A stretch of 13,638 nucleotides of DNA from Octopus sinensis (Eukaryota). The notes beneath the pieces were generated by a model, which was given only the letters and a program-made list of their open reading frames with translations, was not told the origin of the DNA and ran no database searches. The stretch is taken from positions 1-13,638 of the forward strand of contig NW_021826107.1 of the NCBI RefSeq assembly GCF_006345805.1, in the 5' to 3' direction. Positions 116-13,227 of this stretch are shown piece after piece. Each line of letters opens with the position of its first letter. Within the stretch, counting starts at the first letter, position 1. A program made the position numbers and the translations under genes.

Positions 116-427
116 TTAATTGCAATACACATTAATCTGATGGTTGACATTACTATGCAGCTCTATTCAAAGTGTTATCAAAGAAATACTAAACTTTAGG
201 TCGATTTGTTCAACTAAACACCGCAAGACATGGCCGCAGACCAATTAAAAAATAAAAGATACTCAAATTCAATCTTATTCTTTAAGATTCAAATTAATAG
301 ATTTCGTTCTAACATTTTTCATATTTTCAGTGAAATTCGGAGTCGGGAAGCGAAATGTGATCAGTAGTATTATACCAGTCGTTCTTTGGTATTGAGTACT
401 CTTTACTTTTCTTTCTTGTACTCTCAT

Positions 428-815
428 GCGTTTACATACGCGCAGGTTATGTAGTTTGTATGGCAGATGAAAGAATTCCAAAGCGTCTACTCTACGGAGA
501 ACTACGTTCTGGCAAGAAAAAAAAAACTCCTTAAAAATCAAAGTCAAGATACAAAACATGCTTTAAAACTGGTTTCATAAAAGATAATATTGATGTGCAA
601 AGCTGGGAAATGTTTATAATTGACATGGCACCACGGAGAATATATCTGCAGACTGTATTCCTGAATCATGAAGAGATTTCATTAGAAAGGGAAACTGTAA
701 ACGAGACGCGAGGAAAGGAAATCCACATGGTAATTAAATAATCTTTTAATCTTCATCCTGTAGCTAAGTTTGTCTGTCTAAGACTGATCTTGGTTCCTAC
801 TTGAAGATGAATGAA
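428..815 (+). pseudogene. Degraded RTE-clade LINE ORF2 C-terminal fragment (frameshifts and stops)
   Basis: From 442 the frame reads AGYVVCMADERIPKRLLYGELRSGK, matching the RTE motif WAGHVxRMxDxRIPKxLLYGELxxGKR. After frameshifts come NIDVQSWE, KRDARK and, at 759-812, CS*VCLSKTDLGSYLKM, which resembles the RTE C-terminal CxxxCxSxxGLxSH motif. Confidence 0.8.
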
Positions 816-1501: not shown

Positions 1502-1776
1502 TAGTAAAGATTGTTTGCCAACATAACATGGCAGTCCTGGTTTAGGACGAATGTTGCTGTAATTTAGCCCCAGGAGACATCGTCTCCAGCTGGCTATACA
1601 ACACGATCTGTGTCCTTATCCTTTCGAACAAGAATGCTAGATTCCCTTGTTCGAAAATATAAGGACACAGATCGTGTCATATAGCCAGCTGGAGACGATG
1701 TCTCCTGGGGCTAAATTACAGCAGCATTTGTCCTAAACCAGGACTGCCATGTTATGCTGGCAAACAATCTTTACTA
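1502..1776. repeat. Long palindrome / fold-back element (MITE-like), arms ~131-134 bp
   Basis: 1502-1635 is the reverse complement of 1641-1776, with 7 substitutions and a 2-nt bulge near the GCTAG apex. Each arm contains a GGAGAC-ATC-GTCTCC mini-hairpin. Confidence 0.9.
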
Positions 1777-2395: not shown

Positions 2396-2606
2396 TGTTT
2401 TATTCTTTTATTTGTTTTAGTCATTTGACTGCCGCCATGCTGGAGCACTGCCTTTAGTCAAGCAAATCGACCCCAGGACTTATTCTTTGTAATCCTAGTA
2501 CTTATTCTATCGGTCTCTTTTGCCGAACCGCTAAGTTACGGGCACGTAAACACACTACCATCGGTTGTCAAGCGATGAAAGGGGGACAAATACAGGCACG
2601 CAAATA
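2396..2606 (-). mobile_element. 3' half of octopus-type tRNA-SINE (family of 6646-7066 and 11491-11893), interrupted by a mariner
   Basis: The reverse complement aligns with 11690-11890 (...GGGGTCGATTTGCT..GACTAAAGGCAGTGCTCCAGCATGGCGGCAGTCAAATGACT...). Confidence 0.9.
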
Positions 2607-2904
2607 TTAGGTTGTCATGAAAGGTCCTGCGGTTTTTAACCTTTAAATTCAGATGCACATATCTCGGCTCAAACAAAACTTTATTAATCGAAATAAACAC
2701 TATCAGAATCAACACACTTTTGCCAACGCGAAACAAGTTTATTTATGCCAGTAGCGTGAAAATGACCTTCTTCTAGGGCGATGAAGTCGTTGGGTTGTTT
2801 GGTGTGTGTTTGGCATCGTTGGTTTTGAAGCATTTCTCACGCAGGAAGTTGTCGAGATGCTTGGAAAAGTGGTAGTCGGTAGGCGAGAAGTCTGGTGAGT
2901 ATGG
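2607..2904 (-). mobile_element. Mariner (Hsmar1/cecropia-like) 3' fragment: transposase C-terminus remnant plus terminal inverted repeat
   Basis: The minus strand encodes PYSPDFSPTDYHFSKHLDNFLREKCF, then after frameshifts NDFIA...FHATGINK/LVSRWQKCVDSDSVYFD* (stop at 2684-2686). This parallels Hsmar1 PYSPDLSPTDYHFFKHLDNFL...FYATGINKLISRWQKCVDCNGSYFD. The TIR TTAGGTTGTCATGAAAGGTCCTGCGGTTTT (2607-2636) follows a TA target (2605-2606) and resembles the Hsmar1 TIR TTAGGTTGGTGCAAAAGTAATTGCGGTTTT. Confidence 0.9.
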
Positions 2905-3255
2905 CGCGCGCACACACACACATACATATGTTTCATAGCTAGCAGAACCTCGGAAATAGTAATTATCCAAACGTGTGGATGAATCCGTTAACTGCTCGTC
3001 GGACGAAAGATACCCGAACCAAAAAAGGGTTTATATTGTTGTCAAGGGATCCCGTGATGACTCGCAGGAGATTCAATGGAAAATGCGTGGAAAGCACAGA
3101 AATTGAGAGGTAAAAGGAAAACGTATTAATGAAAAAGTAATCTAAGAAAGTGGGTAAATGTCTAAACTTGTTAAGGAAAAGAATAAGAACACGAAAAGAG
3201 AAAAGGAGACGAGTACTTCTTCACCAATATGCTTTCCCTTTTCTTCTCAATTTCT

Positions 3256-3440
3256 TATTTCTTTATTACCCACAAGGGGCAACCCACAGAGGGAACAAAC
3301 AAGGACAGACAAACGGATTAAGTCGATTATATCGACCCCCAGTGCGTAACTAGTAATTATTTAATCGACCCCGAAAGGATGAAAGGCAAAGTCGGCCTCG
3401 GCGGAATTTGAACTCGGAACGTAACGGCAGACGAAATGCC
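3256..3440 (-). mobile_element. 5'-truncated tRNA-SINE copy (B box, core and tail; lacks A box), in tandem with the next copy
   Basis: Direct repeat of 3441-3624 with scattered substitutions. Confidence 0.9.
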
Positions 3441-3670
3441 TATTTCTTTATTACCCACAAGGGGCTAAACACAGAGGGGACAAACAAGGACAGACAAACG
3501 GATCAAGTCGATTACATCGACCCCAGTGCGTAACTGGTACTTAATTTATCGACCCCGAAAGGATGAAAGGCAAAGTCGACCTCGGCGGAATTTGAACTCG
3601 GAACGTAACGGTAGACGAAATACCGCTAAGCATTTCGCCCGGCGTGCTAACGATTCTGCCAAATCGCCGT
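3441..3670 (-). mobile_element. Full-length octopus-type tRNA-derived SINE
   Basis: Minus strand has an A box TGGCAGAATCG (3651-3661), a B box GAGTTCAAATT (3589-3599), a core GCCTTTCATCCTTTCGGGGTCGATAAA...GGGGTCGATGTAATCGAC and a tail ending AATAAAGAAATA. A TSD flanks the dimer at 3236-3255 / 3671-3687. Confidence 0.9.
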
Positions 3671-4129
3671 CCCTTTTCTCAATTTCTGTGCTTTCCACAC
3701 ATTTTCGATCGAATCTCCTGTGAGTCATCAGGGGATCTCTTTATCCTGCGAGTCATCATGTGATTCCATGACGACAATGTAAACCTCTTTTGATTCAGGT
3801 ATCTTTAGTTAGCGGATTAATCCATCGTTTGGATAATTACTACTTCCCAGGTTCCGCCCGCAGTGAAACATATGTACCATGAATTTTATCTATTCCATTC
3901 TCTAATTTTAGATTTCTATTTGCATACACAGCAACGCCTGCTGCTAACCGGAAGCTATAAAATCATTTTTTTCAGCTTATCGAACTTCGATATAGGAAAA
4001 CTTTTAAACCTTCTACGTCAATAAACCATTATTGTTCCTGTAAGTTGTTCTTTATACTTTCTACGGACTGCTCGAAGCTGACTAGCTTCCTACACCTGGA
4101 GCCTTGGATCTTACCTTTACATATGATAT

Positions 4130-5942: not shown

Positions 5943-6240
5943 TTAGCAATTAAGGACAACTACTTAATAAGGAAAACTTAACAAGAAATTGTCAGGTAGA
6001 TAGCGTAAAAACCTCATAAGAGAAAAAATTTCGAAAATAATTATTTCTTATTGAACATATTAATTTATATATAGAGGGCATTATACATACATGTGTATGT
6101 ATAATGCCCTCTATATATAATTAATATGTTCAATAAGAAATAATTATTTTCGAAATTTTTTCTCTTATGAGGTTTTTACGCTATCTACCTGACAATTTCT
6201 TGTTAAGTTTTCCTTATTAAGTAGTTGTCCTTATTGCTAA
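5943..6240. repeat. Essentially perfect palindrome, arms 149/147 bp, apex at 6092-6093
   Basis: 5943-6091 is the reverse complement of 6094-6240, with no substitutions and only two single-T homopolymer indels. Confidence 0.92.
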
Positions 6241-6593: not shown

Positions 6594-6645
6594 ATATAAT
6601 ATATATATATAATATATATTATATTATATATATATATATATACAT

Positions 6646-7066
6646 AGGCCCTGAGTGGCTGTGTGGTAAGAAGCTTTCTTCCCACCACATGGTTCCGGAT
6701 TCAATCCCACTGCGTGGCACCTTCGGTAACTGTCTACTACTATAGCCTCGGGACGACCAAAGCCTTGTGAGTGAGTTTAATAGACGGAAACTGAAAGAAC
6801 CCATCGTGTATATGTGTGTGTACGTTTGTGTGTGTGTATTTATGTATGTGTGTGTGTGTGTATGCCTTTGTGTCTGTGTTTGTCATCCCACCATTGTTCG
6901 ACAACCGATATTGGTTCGTTTATGTCCCCATAATCTAGTGGTTCGACAAAGAAGACCGATAGAATAAGTACTAGGCTTACAAAGAACAAGTCCTGGGGTC
7001 GATTTGTTCGACTAAAGGCCGTGCTCCAGCATGGCCGCAGTCAAATGACTGATACGTGTAAAATAG
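6646..7066 (+). mobile_element. Full-length octopus-type tRNA-SINE with internal (TG/TA) microsatellite
   Basis: A box TGGCTGTGTGG (6656-6666), B box GGATTCAATCC (6697-6707). Colinear with 11491-11893. Confidence 0.9.
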
Positions 7067-7249
7067 TATATATACACACACACACACGTGTGTGTGCATA
7101 CGTATTGCGTATGTGCTTGTGTGTTCACAGTGTACTCGAAAGATTTATCGGCTCATTTCCGTTCACCCACTGGCAGTTGAACCAAGTGAAATTGGGGAGA
7201 TTAAAACTGAGTGTGTAAATCTGTTGGGTTCAATGGGCCCCAGGTATTG

Positions 7250-10949: not shown

Positions 10950-11165
10950 AAAGGCAACGCGCTGGCAGAAAATTTAGCACGCTTGGTGAAATGCATAGCA
11001 GTATTTCGTCTGTCTTTACGTTCTGAGTTCAAATTCTGCTGAGGCCGACTTTGCCTTTCATCCTTTCGGAGTCGATAAATTAAGCACCAGTTGCGTACTG
11101 GGGTCGATCTAATCGACTTGGCCCCCTACTCCAAAATTTCGAGCCTTGCGCTTAGAGTAGAAAAG
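10950..11165 (+). mobile_element. tRNA-SINE, same head and core as 3441-3670 but a different 3' tail; 17-bp TSD
   Basis: A box ~10963, B box GAGTTCAAATT (11025-11035). TSD is AATAATGCCGTTA(T/A)TGG at 10933-10949 / 11166-11182. Confidence 0.9.
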
Positions 11166-11490
11166 AATAATGCCGTTAATGGTTATCGACGAAGACTTGG
11201 TATCACCAGGCACTGTGTCTTTCGCTACAAGCAGGCAGAGGCACGCTCTGGACCCCGTTCCACCCTTGCCCACAACGGAAAGACTGTTTTCTAATGTCTC
11301 TTTAGTCAATAATAAATAATAGGAGCTTGTTTCTACATGCATCCACAACTTATAAAATGCTCAAATGTTTTGAAACCATTTATAGAATGCAATGTAAGGT
11401 GACACCAGACTCCAGTAACGAATTATTGACGTGTATCTACACGATTTTATCAAATCATATGTATGTTTGTATGTACGTGTAAACATACAT

Positions 11491-11893
11491 AGGCGCAGGA
11501 GTGGTAAGTAGCTTGCTAACCAACCACATGGTTCCGAGTTCAGTCCCACTGTGTGGCATCTTGGGCAAGTGTCTTCTGCTATAGCCTCGGGCCGACCAAA
11601 GCCTTGTGAGTGAATTTGGTAGACGGAAACTGAAAGAAGCCTGTCGTATATATGTATATATATATGTATGCGTGTGTATATGTTTGTGTGTCTGTGTTTG
11701 CCCCCCCCCCGCCCTAGCATTGCTTGACAACCGACGCTGGTGTGTTTACGTCCCCGTCACTTAGCGGTTTGGCAAAAGAGTGCTGGGCTTACAAAGAATA
11801 AGTCCCGGGGTCGATTTGCTCGACTAAAAGCGGTGCTCCAGCATGGCCGCAGTCAAATGACTGAAACAATTAAAAGAGTAAAAGAGAAAAGAG
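11491..11893 (+). mobile_element. Full-length octopus-type tRNA-SINE (8-nt deletion in A-box region)
   Basis: Colinear with 6646-7066. B box GAGTTCAGTCC (11536-11546), AAAAGAGT-type 3' repeats. Confidence 0.9.
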
Positions 11894-12062: not shown

Positions 12063-12117
12063 GGCGGTGCCCCAGCATGGCCACAGCTCATGAGCTGAAA
12101 CTAGAATCAATCAATCA
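12063..12117 (+). mobile_element. Tail-only (5'-truncated) retroposon fragment related to the SINE 3' end
   Basis: GGCGGTGCCCCAGCATGGCCACAGCTCATGAGCTGAAAC plus (AATC)n, compared with the SINE tail GCGGTGCTCCAGCATGGCCGCAGTCAAATGACTGAAAC. Confidence 0.7.
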
Positions 12118-12294
12118 TATTAAATAGTTTTATTATAACTTATATAAGAAAAACTTTAATAATTGCCATAGACGGAAGTCAAAAAAGATTTATTAACAAC
12201 CTGCAATGTACTTCTTCTTGTAATGCTTTTTCAAAATTATGAATGGCATATATCTTCGTATAATGTCCATTCTAAAAAATATAAATAAAAAAAT

Positions 12295-12691
12295 AATTCA
12301 TAAATAAGGGCAAACGAAATTTCTAATGCCAAATATGCCGAAAAGATCAGTTCAAATCGCACGTGTCTCGAATGGGCTGGAGTATTTCTATTTTGGATAT
12401 ATTTGTGGTGCTTAATTGTGCTCATGACTTAGTGTTTGCTTCTTCCATGGGTATGAGTAAGGATCTCATTTATTTCTTTTGCCACATGTATCACTGACGA
12501 AGGGAGGGCTGTTATAAGCTAACCCTGAAATCGGTCCGATATGGTAATAATGGAATTTTTTAGAAATTTCTGTCGACCTTTTTTCGAGTAGCGTGCGGAT
12601 TGTGAAAAAATTAATGGTTAATGGACAATATGTCCAATTTTTCGACATATTTGGCATTAGAAATTTTTTCGTTTGCCCTTATTTATGAATT
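12295..12691. mobile_element. ~400-bp element bounded by ~50-bp inverted repeats, with a central hammerhead
   Basis: 12295-12344 matches the reverse complement of 12639-12691 (one substitution, one 3-nt A-run indel). The true outer ends and TSD are not resolved. Confidence 0.7.
12489..12546 (+). ncRNA. Type I hammerhead ribozyme with fully intact core
   Basis: TATCA-CTGACGA-AGGG(AG)GGCT-GTTATA-AGCT(AA)CCCT-GAA-ATCGGTCCGAT-A-TGGTA. Stem I is 5 bp, stem II is 4+4 bp, stem III is ATCG/CGAT. The NUH triplet is AUA, with a predicted cut after 12541. Confidence 0.85.
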
Positions 12692-12994
12692 GTTTATGAA
12701 TTTAACCTTTAAAGGTATTTTTTAATATGCTGGCCATTGATAAAATTCTTTTGGGAAGAGAATTTTTTTCGAAAAAAAATTTTATCCTACATTAGATATA
12801 AATTTTTAAAAATAGATACAAACGAATGACATCATAGTTTCACACCTCAAAACCCAGGCTAAATTAGAAAACAAACCAAAATAACAACTCTGCTGTTCGC
12901 ATTACATTTTCTGGTTCTATGCTCCAACGTTGCCTGAATCATGAAGTTTTCCTTAATAATTTCTATGATATATATTTTTTTCAAGAATACCATA

Positions 12995-13227
12995 CGGGTA
13001 TATGGCGTAGTGGTTAAGAGCGCGGGCTACAAACCCCAAGATTCCGAGTTCGATTCTAGGCAGTGACTTAAATAATAATAATAATAATAATAACAATAAT
13101 AATAACAATAATAATAATAATAATATAATATCGAAAAATACCCTTGGAATGAGAACCCAGGTTCGAAATTTCCCCAATATATTTGATGAAGGCTGGAGGG
13201 TATATCAGCCGAAACGTTGTGTTAGCA
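12995..13227 (+). mobile_element. tRNA-headed SINE-like element: tRNA-like head, (AAT)n spacer, hammerhead-containing tail
   Basis: A box TGGCGTAGTGG (13003-13013), B box GAGTTCGATTC (13046-13056), (AAT/AAC)n 13071-13125, HHR motif 13178-13223. Confidence 0.8.
13178..13223 (+). ncRNA. Minimal type I hammerhead motif, C3U variant (probably decayed copy)
   Basis: TATAT-TTGATGA-A-GGCTG-GAGGGTATAT-CAGCC-GAA-ACGT-T-GTGTT. Stem II is 5 bp, stem III is the palindrome ACGT (dimer only), the site is GUU, and stem I is held by A-U and G.U pairs. Confidence 0.65.

What the first reader, a model, noticed from the sequence alone, without database searches (positions are those of the whole stretch)
12295..12691. 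Intact hammerhead ribozyme at the centre of an inverted-repeat-bounded ~400-bp element
Seen: every conserved core residue is present (C3-A9 CTGACGA, G12-A14, A15.1:U16.1, A17), with an allowed A10.1:U11.1 pair. Stem III can fold as a monomer (4 bp plus a GUC triloop) or as a 5+5-bp dimer. The HHR begins at almost the exact midpoint between the ~50-bp inverted repeats (12295-12344/12639-12691). Inference: MITE-like termini combined with a ribozyme are unexpected. The element could be a PLE derivative with inverted pseudo-LTR ends, a MITE that captured a ribozyme, or a new RNA-mobilised mini-element whose transcript folds into a closed panhandle. This is the best candidate for an active self-cleaving RNA. 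If it lies sense within a host intron, it would cut the pre-mRNA.
Basis: partly seen in the sequence, partly recalled or inferred. Interest (0 to 1): 0.85.

Follow-up and report, generated by a model that had tools for sequence, protein, structure and literature searches.

The report
Hammerhead-like motif inside an inverted-repeat element
A ~400-bp inverted-repeat element in an octopus-type genome carries a sequence with every consensus feature of a hammerhead self-cleaving RNA, but no curated model recognises it and no second copy could be found, so it is not shown to be a working ribozyme.

Summary
Inverted repeats lie at 12295-12344 / 12639-12691, 49/50 matches plus a 3-nt indel, extendable to 12282 / 12704. 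A formally complete type-I hammerhead motif lies at 12489-12546, with the predicted cut after A12541.

For a real ribozyme: random-sequence models give about 1e-4 such motifs per window. The first three helix-I pairs match validated mussel and axolotl hammerheads.

Against: no Rfam hammerhead model reports a match at E<=10, even on the 69-nt stretch. A model built from four validated metazoan hammerheads ranks it first in the window, but only at 11.7 bits (E about 0.1). Helix II is twice the usual length, 10.1:11.1 is A:U, and helix III is not a perfect palindrome. There is no second hammerhead, tandem copy or RT/GIY-YIG remnant in the window.

The window is octopus-type DNA, and no other copy of the element was reachable with these tools. 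Whether repeats and motif travel together is therefore untested. Three unrelated near-perfect foldback palindromes in the same window show that inverted-repeat elements are common here.

Rough probabilities: about 45% a MITE/foldback-like element with a fortuitous or inert motif, about 35% a PLE/retrozyme-lineage hammerhead in an inverted arrangement, about 10% a new combination. Interest is modest.

The parts
12282..12344 (.). Left inverted-repeat arm. The well-matched core is 12295-12344; the outer 13 nt match only 9/13.
12639..12704 (.). Right inverted-repeat arm. The core is 12639-12691. It carries a 3-nt insertion relative to the left arm and a local duplication TTTATGAATT-G-TTTATGAATT at its outer end.
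12345..12638 (.). Central segment of 294 bp with no long ORF of recognisable family. It is predicted to fold into two local hairpins above the terminal panhandle.
12560..12584 (.). Internal degenerate inverted copy of part of the left arm (25 nt, 80% to 12302-12326). It may be a subterminal repeat or may be chance.
   Evidence: (I5)
12489..12493 (+). Hammerhead-like motif, helix I 5' strand (UAUCA)
12494..12500 (+). Core C3-A9, CUGACGA
12501..12526 (+). Helix II, unusually long at 26 nt: 4 bp starting with A10.1:U11.1, a 2x2 internal loop, 4 bp, then the hexaloop GUUAUA.
12527..12530 (+). Core G12 A13 A14 A15.1 (GAAA)
12530..12540 (+). Helix III, AUCG-GUC-CGAU (4 bp plus triloop). It is an odd-length quasi-palindrome that could form 5 + 5 bp with a central U.U in a dimer.
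12541..12541 (+). A17; the predicted cleavage is between 12541 and 12542.
12542..12546 (+). Helix I 3' strand (UGGUA)
12479..12547 (+). Competing imperfect hairpin, which is the minimum-free-energy fold. CUGA of the core pairs with UCGG of helix III, and helix II forms the tip.

Best explanation
The 397-423-bp unit is a short, non-coding, AT-rich inverted-repeat element of the MITE/foldback kind in an octopus-type genome. If it is mobile at all, it moves as DNA through its terminal inverted repeats. The hammerhead-like motif in its central segment is a consensus-complete but atypical match that is not needed for the element's spread. It is most likely fortuitous or catalytically weak.

A read-through transcript would form a panhandle of about 50-60 bp from the two arms. 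It would also form a local hairpin of about 70 nt (12479-12547) that sequesters the CUGA of the core.

Shown: the repeats, the motif, its absence from curated models, the lack of coding capacity and the predicted folds.

Inferred: mobility as DNA, and the fortuitous or inert status of the motif.
For: - Terminal inverted repeats of 50-63 nt bound a unit of about 400 bp at 34% GC with no Pfam-recognisable ORF.
- The same 13.6-kb window holds three other, unrelated, near-perfect foldback palindromes: 1502-1776, 5951-6233 and 2107-2299. Inverted-repeat elements are therefore frequent here. A mariner transposase remnant is also present.
- No Rfam 15 family of any kind reaches gathering score in the window. 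No hammerhead model reports a match at E<=10, even when only the 69-nt motif is searched.
- A covariance model built from four experimentally validated metazoan type-I hammerheads gives only 11.7 bits, E about 0.12.
- Atypical features: helix II is 26 nt against 13-14 nt in the four validated ribozymes, 10.1:11.1 is A:U, and helix III has an odd-length triloop. All four validated ribozymes have a perfectly palindromic helix III plus loop.
- There is no second hammerhead, no tandem or direct copy and no RT or GIY-YIG remnant in the window.
- Predicted base-pair probabilities of helices I and III are below 0.2% in every context tested, and the competing helix forms as soon as 12531-12535 is transcribed.
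Against: - A motif this complete is expected only about 1e-4 times per window in random-sequence models. A cephalopod genome holds at least hundreds of genuine hammerheads: 235 Rfam Hammerhead_1 hits in the giant squid (PMC6962438).
- The candidate is the top-scoring, full-length, in-register hit of my validated-hammerhead model in the window.
- It shares the first three helix-I pairs (UCA before the core, UGG after the cleavage site) with the validated mussel and axolotl ribozymes.
- The folding argument is weak. The validated coral and mussel hammerheads also sit 3.6 and 7.4 kcal/mol above their own minimum-free-energy folds.
- No clear target-site duplication and no second copy of the element were found, so MITE membership is itself unproven.
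Confidence: 0.45

Rival explanations
1. The motif is a genuine type-I hammerhead of the Penelope-like-element (PLE) or non-LTR-retrozyme lineage. The unit is then a head-to-head pair of 5'-truncated retro-copies: an inverted 3'-end fragment of about 63 bp next to a 3'-end fragment of about 360 bp that carries the ribozyme. The 'terminal inverted repeats' would be the two 3' ends. The ribozyme would process read-through or tandem transcripts, possibly as a dimer through its quasi-palindromic helix III.
For: - The catalytic core CUGANGA / GAAAY / RUH is complete, with three helices in type-I topology.
- The chance expectation is about 1e-4 per window.
- It is the top hit of a model built from validated metazoan hammerheads.
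- The start of helix I is identical to the mussel and axolotl ribozymes.
- Unit size (397-423 bp) and GC (34%) resemble mussel retrozymes of 350-390 bp with low GC (PMC7229834).
- PLE insertions are described as often carrying an inverted 5'-truncated copy that creates flanking inverted repeats, with the hammerhead in the pseudo-LTR near the 3' end (PMC8557442).
- PLEs are present, and some recently active, in Octopus vulgaris (PMC13282606).
- A natural ribozyme with a non-G:C 10.1:11.1 position exists and is active: axolotl Ax353 has U.U there.
Against: - No Rfam hammerhead model reports a match at E<=10, and my own model gives E about 0.12.
- Helix II is double the usual length, and helix III is not the perfect even-length palindrome seen in all four validated ribozymes.
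- There is no RT or GIY-YIG remnant, second hammerhead or tandem unit in 13.6 kb.
- Validated retrozymes contain no inverted repeat longer than 27 nt and share no sequence with this element.
Confidence: 0.35
2. This is a new combination. One version is a cut-and-paste inverted-repeat element that carries a working hammerhead as cargo. Another is a small RNA-mobilised element whose transcript closes into a panhandle, with the ribozyme defining one RNA end.
For: A well-matched 50-nt inverted repeat (49/50 plus one indel) and a consensus-complete hammerhead motif lie in one unit of about 400 bp. A full-text search for 'hammerhead ribozyme' with 'terminal inverted repeats' returned four papers, and none of the listed titles or abstracts describes such an element.
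Against: - It requires both that the motif is real, which is undecided, and that the repeats are true transposon termini, for which no target-site duplication and no other copies are known.
- One hammerhead gives only one cut, so it cannot release a unit-length RNA.
- Inverted repeats are common in this window regardless of any ribozyme.
Confidence: 0.1
3. The inverted repeat is a one-off local inverted duplication or an assembly or sequencing foldback artefact. It is not a mobile element, and the motif is fortuitous.
For: The unit is single-copy in everything searched. No target-site duplication was found. The window holds other near-perfect palindromes, one with 100% complementary arms of 115 nt.
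Against: The arms are separated by 294 bp of unique sequence and differ by a mismatch and a 3-nt indel. That looks unlike a read-level foldback artefact.
Confidence: 0.1

Closest known systems
Type-I hammerhead ribozymes of metazoan non-LTR retrozymes (coral, mussel, axolotl; Cervera and de la Pena 2020, PMC7229834)
   Same: - Type-I topology with the complete CUGANGA / GAAAY / RUH core.
- The helix-I start (UCA ... UGG) is identical to mussel and axolotl.
- The host unit is about 400 bp, AT-rich and non-coding.
   Different: - Retrozymes are tandem repeats with one ribozyme per unit; here there is a single motif with no tandem or direct repeat.
- Helix II is 26 nt against 13-14 nt.
- Helix III is a 4-bp stem with a triloop, not a perfect even palindrome.
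- The flanks are long inverted repeats, which validated retrozymes lack.
- There is no sequence similarity outside the core.
Hammerheads in pseudo-LTRs of Penelope-like elements, with their inverted 5'-truncated partner copies (PMC8557442)
   Same: The ribozyme lies a few hundred bases from one end of the unit. The unit is flanked by inverted repeats, as described for complex PLE insertions. PLEs exist in octopus.
   Different: No RT or GIY-YIG coding remnant lies in the window. The arms could not be compared with any PLE consensus. From my own knowledge, PLE hammerheads are described as minimal, with a helix III of 1-2 bp and a palindromic loop, which is unlike the 4-bp helix III here.
MITEs / foldback-type non-autonomous inverted-repeat DNA elements
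   Same: Terminal inverted repeats of 50-63 nt, about 400 bp in length, AT-rich, without coding capacity and predicted to form a long hairpin (z = -13.6).
   Different: No unambiguous target-site duplication, only the palindromic AATT or a TA/TG pair. No second copy was found, so family membership is unproven. MITEs are not known to carry ribozymes (search and my own knowledge).

Membership tests
Hammerhead ribozyme (type I) | Conserved catalytic core CUGANGA ... GAAA(Y) ... (R)UH | tested here: met
   CUGACGA 12494-12500, GAAAU 12527-12531 and AUA 12539-12541.
Hammerhead ribozyme (type I) | Three helices around the core, with helix I open and helices II and III capped | tested here: met
   Helices of 5, 4 (+4) and 4 bp. 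This is the only such site on either strand of the window.
Hammerhead ribozyme (type I) | Recognition by curated covariance models (the hammerhead families of Rfam 15) | tested here: not met
   No match at gathering score, and none at E<=10 on 13.6 kb, 161 nt or 69 nt.
Hammerhead ribozyme (type I) | Similarity to experimentally validated metazoan type-I hammerheads | tested here: inconclusive
   Model R1, built from coral, mussel and two axolotl ribozymes, gives a full-length in-register hit at 12488-12547. It ranks first in the window but scores 11.7 bits with a rough E of about 0.12.
Hammerhead ribozyme (type I) | Usual G10.1:C11.1 pair and compact helix II | tested here: inconclusive
   The pair is A:U and helix II is 26 nt. 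A validated axolotl ribozyme has U.U at this position and still cleaves, so the feature is not disqualifying.
Hammerhead ribozyme (type I) | Self-cleavage at the predicted site | not testable with these tools
   This needs transcription assays or mapping of RNA ends.
Hammerhead ribozyme (type I) | Conservation and compensatory changes in the helices among homologues | not testable with these tools
   No homologous copy was reachable.
Non-LTR retrozyme | Tandem repeats, each with a type-I hammerhead (at least two ribozymes) | tested here: not met
   There is a single motif, no direct or tandem copy and no tandem repeat of long period between 11000 and 13638.
Non-LTR retrozyme | Unit of roughly 170-400 bp, low GC, non-coding | tested here: met
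   397-423 bp and 34% GC, with no recognisable ORF.
Penelope-like element (autonomous or fragment) | RT and GIY-YIG endonuclease coding sequence | tested here: not met
   No Pfam hit at E<=0.1 in any ORF segment of at least 40 aa (strongly low-complexity segments left out) across all six frames of the window. A short 3' fragment would not need this feature.
Penelope-like element (autonomous or fragment) | Termini matching a PLE pseudo-LTR, with an inverted 5'-truncated partner copy | tested here: inconclusive
   The geometry is compatible, but no octopus PLE consensus was available for comparison.
MITE / non-autonomous inverted-repeat DNA transposon | Terminal inverted repeats bounding a short non-coding unit | tested here: met
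MITE / non-autonomous inverted-repeat DNA transposon | Target-site duplication | tested here: inconclusive
   Only the palindromic AATT at 12295-98 / 12688-91, or TA on the left against TG on the right. Neither can be told apart from an extension of the repeat.
MITE / non-autonomous inverted-repeat DNA transposon | Multiple dispersed copies | tested here: inconclusive
   None was found in the window or in 20 kb of O. vulgaris. No octopus genome could be searched at the DNA level.

The most novel reading that the evidence does not exclude
A mobile element bounded by true terminal inverted repeats carries a working hammerhead ribozyme. It would be either a DNA transposon with a self-cleaving RNA as cargo, or a small RNA-mobilised element whose transcript closes into a panhandle. 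That would link two classes of mobile elements not known to be combined.
Probability: 0.1. Interest if true: 0.75.

Novelty: new member of a known kind. Interest (0 to 1): 0.3.

Why it matters
If the motif is a real ribozyme of the PLE/retrozyme lineage, this adds a cephalopod example with an unusually long helix II that curated models miss. That would suggest current hammerhead counts in cephalopod genomes are underestimates.

If the inverted repeats are true transposon termini and the ribozyme is active, it would be a combination I found no description of. That would be worth a bench test.

If the motif is fortuitous, it is a useful warning. A sequence can satisfy every descriptor rule used in the field and still lack support from any model.

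Tried and rejected
1. Finding other copies through spurious ORFs.
- The 63-aa antisense ORF over the motif shared no words with any of 5.8 billion proteins.
- The 43-aa ORF over the left arm gave one unrelated repetitive protein in 1.84 billion representatives.
- Thirty exact look-ups of window ORFs were all absent from the collection.

2. DNA pattern scans.
- The repeat arm gave 0 hits in metagenomes and in viral contigs.
- The hammerhead pattern hit four metagenome contigs, all of them bacterial ftsZ coding for LTKGLGAGANPEIG. This is coincidence, not homology.

3. Sampling octopus DNA.
- A SINE-derived ORF led to an Octopus vulgaris protein and a 20-kb locus, L001. That locus shares the window's SINEs but holds no copy of the element.
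- A chimeric padded query returned mariner transposases on short contigs of unknown origin and an Argonauta gene too long to fetch.
- L006 comes from an unidentified source: an ENA metagenome contig that shares only the mariner with the window.

4. The thermodynamic argument against activity. I downgraded it after calibration, because validated coral and mussel hammerheads are also not their own minimum-free-energy folds.

5. The idea that the arms are simply the rod-like self-pairing of a retrozyme circle. I rejected it, because validated retrozymes have no inverted repeat longer than 27 nt.

6. The CTGATGA...GAAA match at 3683-3731 (-). It has no hammerhead helices and is part of a short direct repeat.

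7. Locating the window in an annotated gene to settle the intron question. This failed.

Full report
**What the window is.** The window is AT-rich (24-44% GC) and full of microsatellites, with no ORF longer than 119 aa from a start codon. A tRNA-derived SINE at 11489-11889 is 81-87% identical to copies in a 20-kb stretch of the Octopus vulgaris chromosome OX597836.1. I reached that stretch through a SINE-derived 'hypothetical protein' of that species. The window is therefore octopus-type nuclear DNA. I could not place it on a chromosome or in a gene, because thirty exact look-ups of its ORFs found nothing.

**Checking the inverted repeats.** The repeats are real. 12282-12344 pairs with 12639-12704 (63/66 nt, 88%, blastn E 1e-18).

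**Checking the hammerhead motif.**
- helix I: 12489-93 / 12542-46
- core: CUGACGA 12494-12500
- helix II: 12501-04 / 12523-26, continued by 12507-10 / 12517-20
- GAAA: 12527-30
- helix III: 12530-33 / 12537-40 with a GUC triloop
- A17: 12541

It satisfies the criterion used in the field, 'perfect helix topology plus CUGANGA / GAAAY / RUH' (supplement of PMC7229834). A descriptor I wrote finds this one site and no other on either strand.

**How likely the motif is by chance.** At this stringency the descriptor found 1 hit in 600 Mb of i.i.d. sequence, 0 in 240 Mb of Markov-1 sequence and 1 in 40 Mb. That is roughly 1e-4 per window, or 10-60 per 2.7-Gb genome. These models understate the chance in real DNA. 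The motif sits in a local imperfect palindrome of 70 nt (12479-12547), which supplies paired stems for free.

**Evidence against a canonical hammerhead.**
- Rfam 15 gives nothing at gathering score. No hammerhead model reports a match at E<=10, whether 13.6 kb, 161 nt or only the 69-nt motif is searched.
- I built a covariance model from four experimentally validated metazoan type-I hammerheads: coral Amil224, mussel Mg353 and axolotl Ax353 and Ax330 (sequences from the supplement of PMC7229834). The candidate is the best hit in the window, full-length and in register. It scores only 11.7 bits with a rough E of about 0.12.
- Helix II is 26 nt against 13-14 nt in the four validated ribozymes, and 10.1:11.1 is A:U.
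- Helix III plus its loop is an odd-length quasi-palindrome (AUCGGUCCGAU). All four validated ribozymes have a perfect even-length palindrome there.

**Evidence for a real hammerhead.**
- The chance expectation is low.
- The candidate ranks first under the validated-hammerhead model.
- The first three helix-I pairs (UCA before the core, UGG after the cleavage site) are identical to those of the mussel and axolotl ribozymes.

**A check on my own folding argument.** The hammerhead fold is predicted at -11.7 to -15.2 kcal/mol, against -22 for a hairpin in which CUGA pairs with UCGG of helix III. Helices I and III have predicted probabilities below 0.2%. The validated coral and mussel ribozymes are also 3.6 and 7.4 kcal/mol above their own minimum-free-energy folds, with helix III probabilities near zero. 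This argument therefore cannot separate real from false, and I give it little weight.

**What the element is.**
- It is 397-423 bp at 34% GC, and none of its ORFs of 20-63 aa matches any family.
- No unambiguous target-site duplication exists. The only candidates are a palindromic AATT, or TA on the left against TG on the right.
- There is no second copy in the window or in the 20-kb octopus locus.
- Nothing in six-frame ORF segments of the window matches reverse transcriptase or GIY-YIG endonuclease.
- There is no second hammerhead and no tandem repeat.
- Validated retrozymes contain no inverted repeat longer than 27 nt and share no sequence with the element. The arms are therefore not just the self-pairing of a retrozyme circle.
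- The same window holds three other, mutually unrelated, near-perfect foldback palindromes: 1502-1776 (131-nt arms, 95%), 5951-6233 (115-nt arms, 100%) and 2107-2299 (84-nt arms, 98%). Short inverted-repeat structures are thus frequent here whether or not a ribozyme is involved. That lowers the significance of finding the motif inside one.

**Literature context.**
- Metazoan type-I hammerheads lie in tandem non-LTR retrozymes of about 170-400 bp and in PLE pseudo-LTRs (PMC7229834; preprint 10.64898/2026.07.22.740005).
- PLE insertions often carry an inverted 5'-truncated partner copy that creates flanking inverted repeats (PMC8557442).
- PLEs are present, and some recently active, in O. vulgaris (PMC13282606).
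- The giant squid genome has only 235 Rfam Hammerhead_1 hits (PMC6962438). Genuine model-detectable hammerheads are thus about 1e-3 per window in a cephalopod, only some ten-fold above the random-model rate for a descriptor-level match.
- A full-text search for hammerheads together with terminal inverted repeats returned four papers. None of the listed titles or abstracts describes such an element.

**Weighing.** The prior favours a real lineage over chance by perhaps 4-12 to 1. The complete failure of curated models and the atypical helices II and III pull the other way by a similar factor. My rough split is:
- about 45%: a MITE/foldback-like element with a fortuitous or inert motif
- about 35%: a PLE/retrozyme-lineage hammerhead in a head-to-head truncated arrangement
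- about 10%: a genuinely new combination of transposon termini and a ribozyme
- about 10%: a one-off inverted duplication or artefact

The decisive test is to collect the element's copies from octopus assemblies. That would take minutes with a genome BLAST, but it was not possible with the collections available here.

**Searches that led nowhere.**
- The ORF-based searches for other copies found nothing.
- The repeat-arm pattern gave no hits in metagenome or viral contigs.
- The hammerhead pattern scan hit only bacterial ftsZ genes.
- A chimeric query meant to harvest more octopus loci returned mariner transposases on short contigs, an ENA metagenome contig of unidentified origin, and an Argonauta gene too long to fetch.

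Noticed in passing
window 1502-1776, 5951-6233, 2107-2299: Three near-perfect foldback palindromes with arms of 131 nt at 95%, 115 nt at 100% and 84 nt at 98%, and spacers of 13-53 nt. They are unrelated to each other and to the element studied. Rfam's microRNA models pick them up weakly. They could be foldback or MITE-like elements, local inverted duplications or assembly artefacts.
   Followed up: partly
window 11489-11889 (+), 6644-7068 (+), 2398-2604 (-); a short tail fragment at 12064-12101: Copies of a tRNA-derived SINE, 76-88% identical to copies in the Octopus vulgaris locus L001. The repeated tail GCGGTGC(T/C)CCAGCATGGCC...CTGAAAC accounts for direct repeat D2. It is not a hammerhead.
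   Followed up: partly
window 3319-3669 and 10951-11171: Copies of a second short repeat family with tRNA-like segments. They also match L001 at 17724-18230 and 2852-2937.
   Followed up: no
window 2632-3030 (-): A remnant of the C-terminal end of a mariner transposase (YSPDFSPTDYHF... and ...INKLVSRWQKCVDSDSVYFD, in two frames). It retrieves PF01359 transposases and is 75% identical at the DNA level to a mariner in the ENA contig L006.
   Followed up: partly
window 361-738 (+): A reading frame with one stop (…CMADERIPKRLLYGELRSGKKK…DVQSWE…) that resembles, by eye only, the C-terminal tail of LINE ORF2 proteins. Neither Pfam nor the protein search confirmed it.
   Followed up: partly
window 13192-13226 (+): The second-best hit of my hammerhead model (8.9 bits, E about 0.8): GGAGG...CCGAAACGUUGUGUU. 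It has a helix II / GAAAC-like half but no CUGANGA, and it is most likely chance.
   Followed up: no
L002-L005 (metagenome contigs): The pattern CTGACGAAGGG-N18-CCCTGAAATCGG matches the bacterial ftsZ coding sequence for LTKGLGAGANPEIG. This is a coincidence worth knowing about when scanning for this motif.
   Followed up: yes
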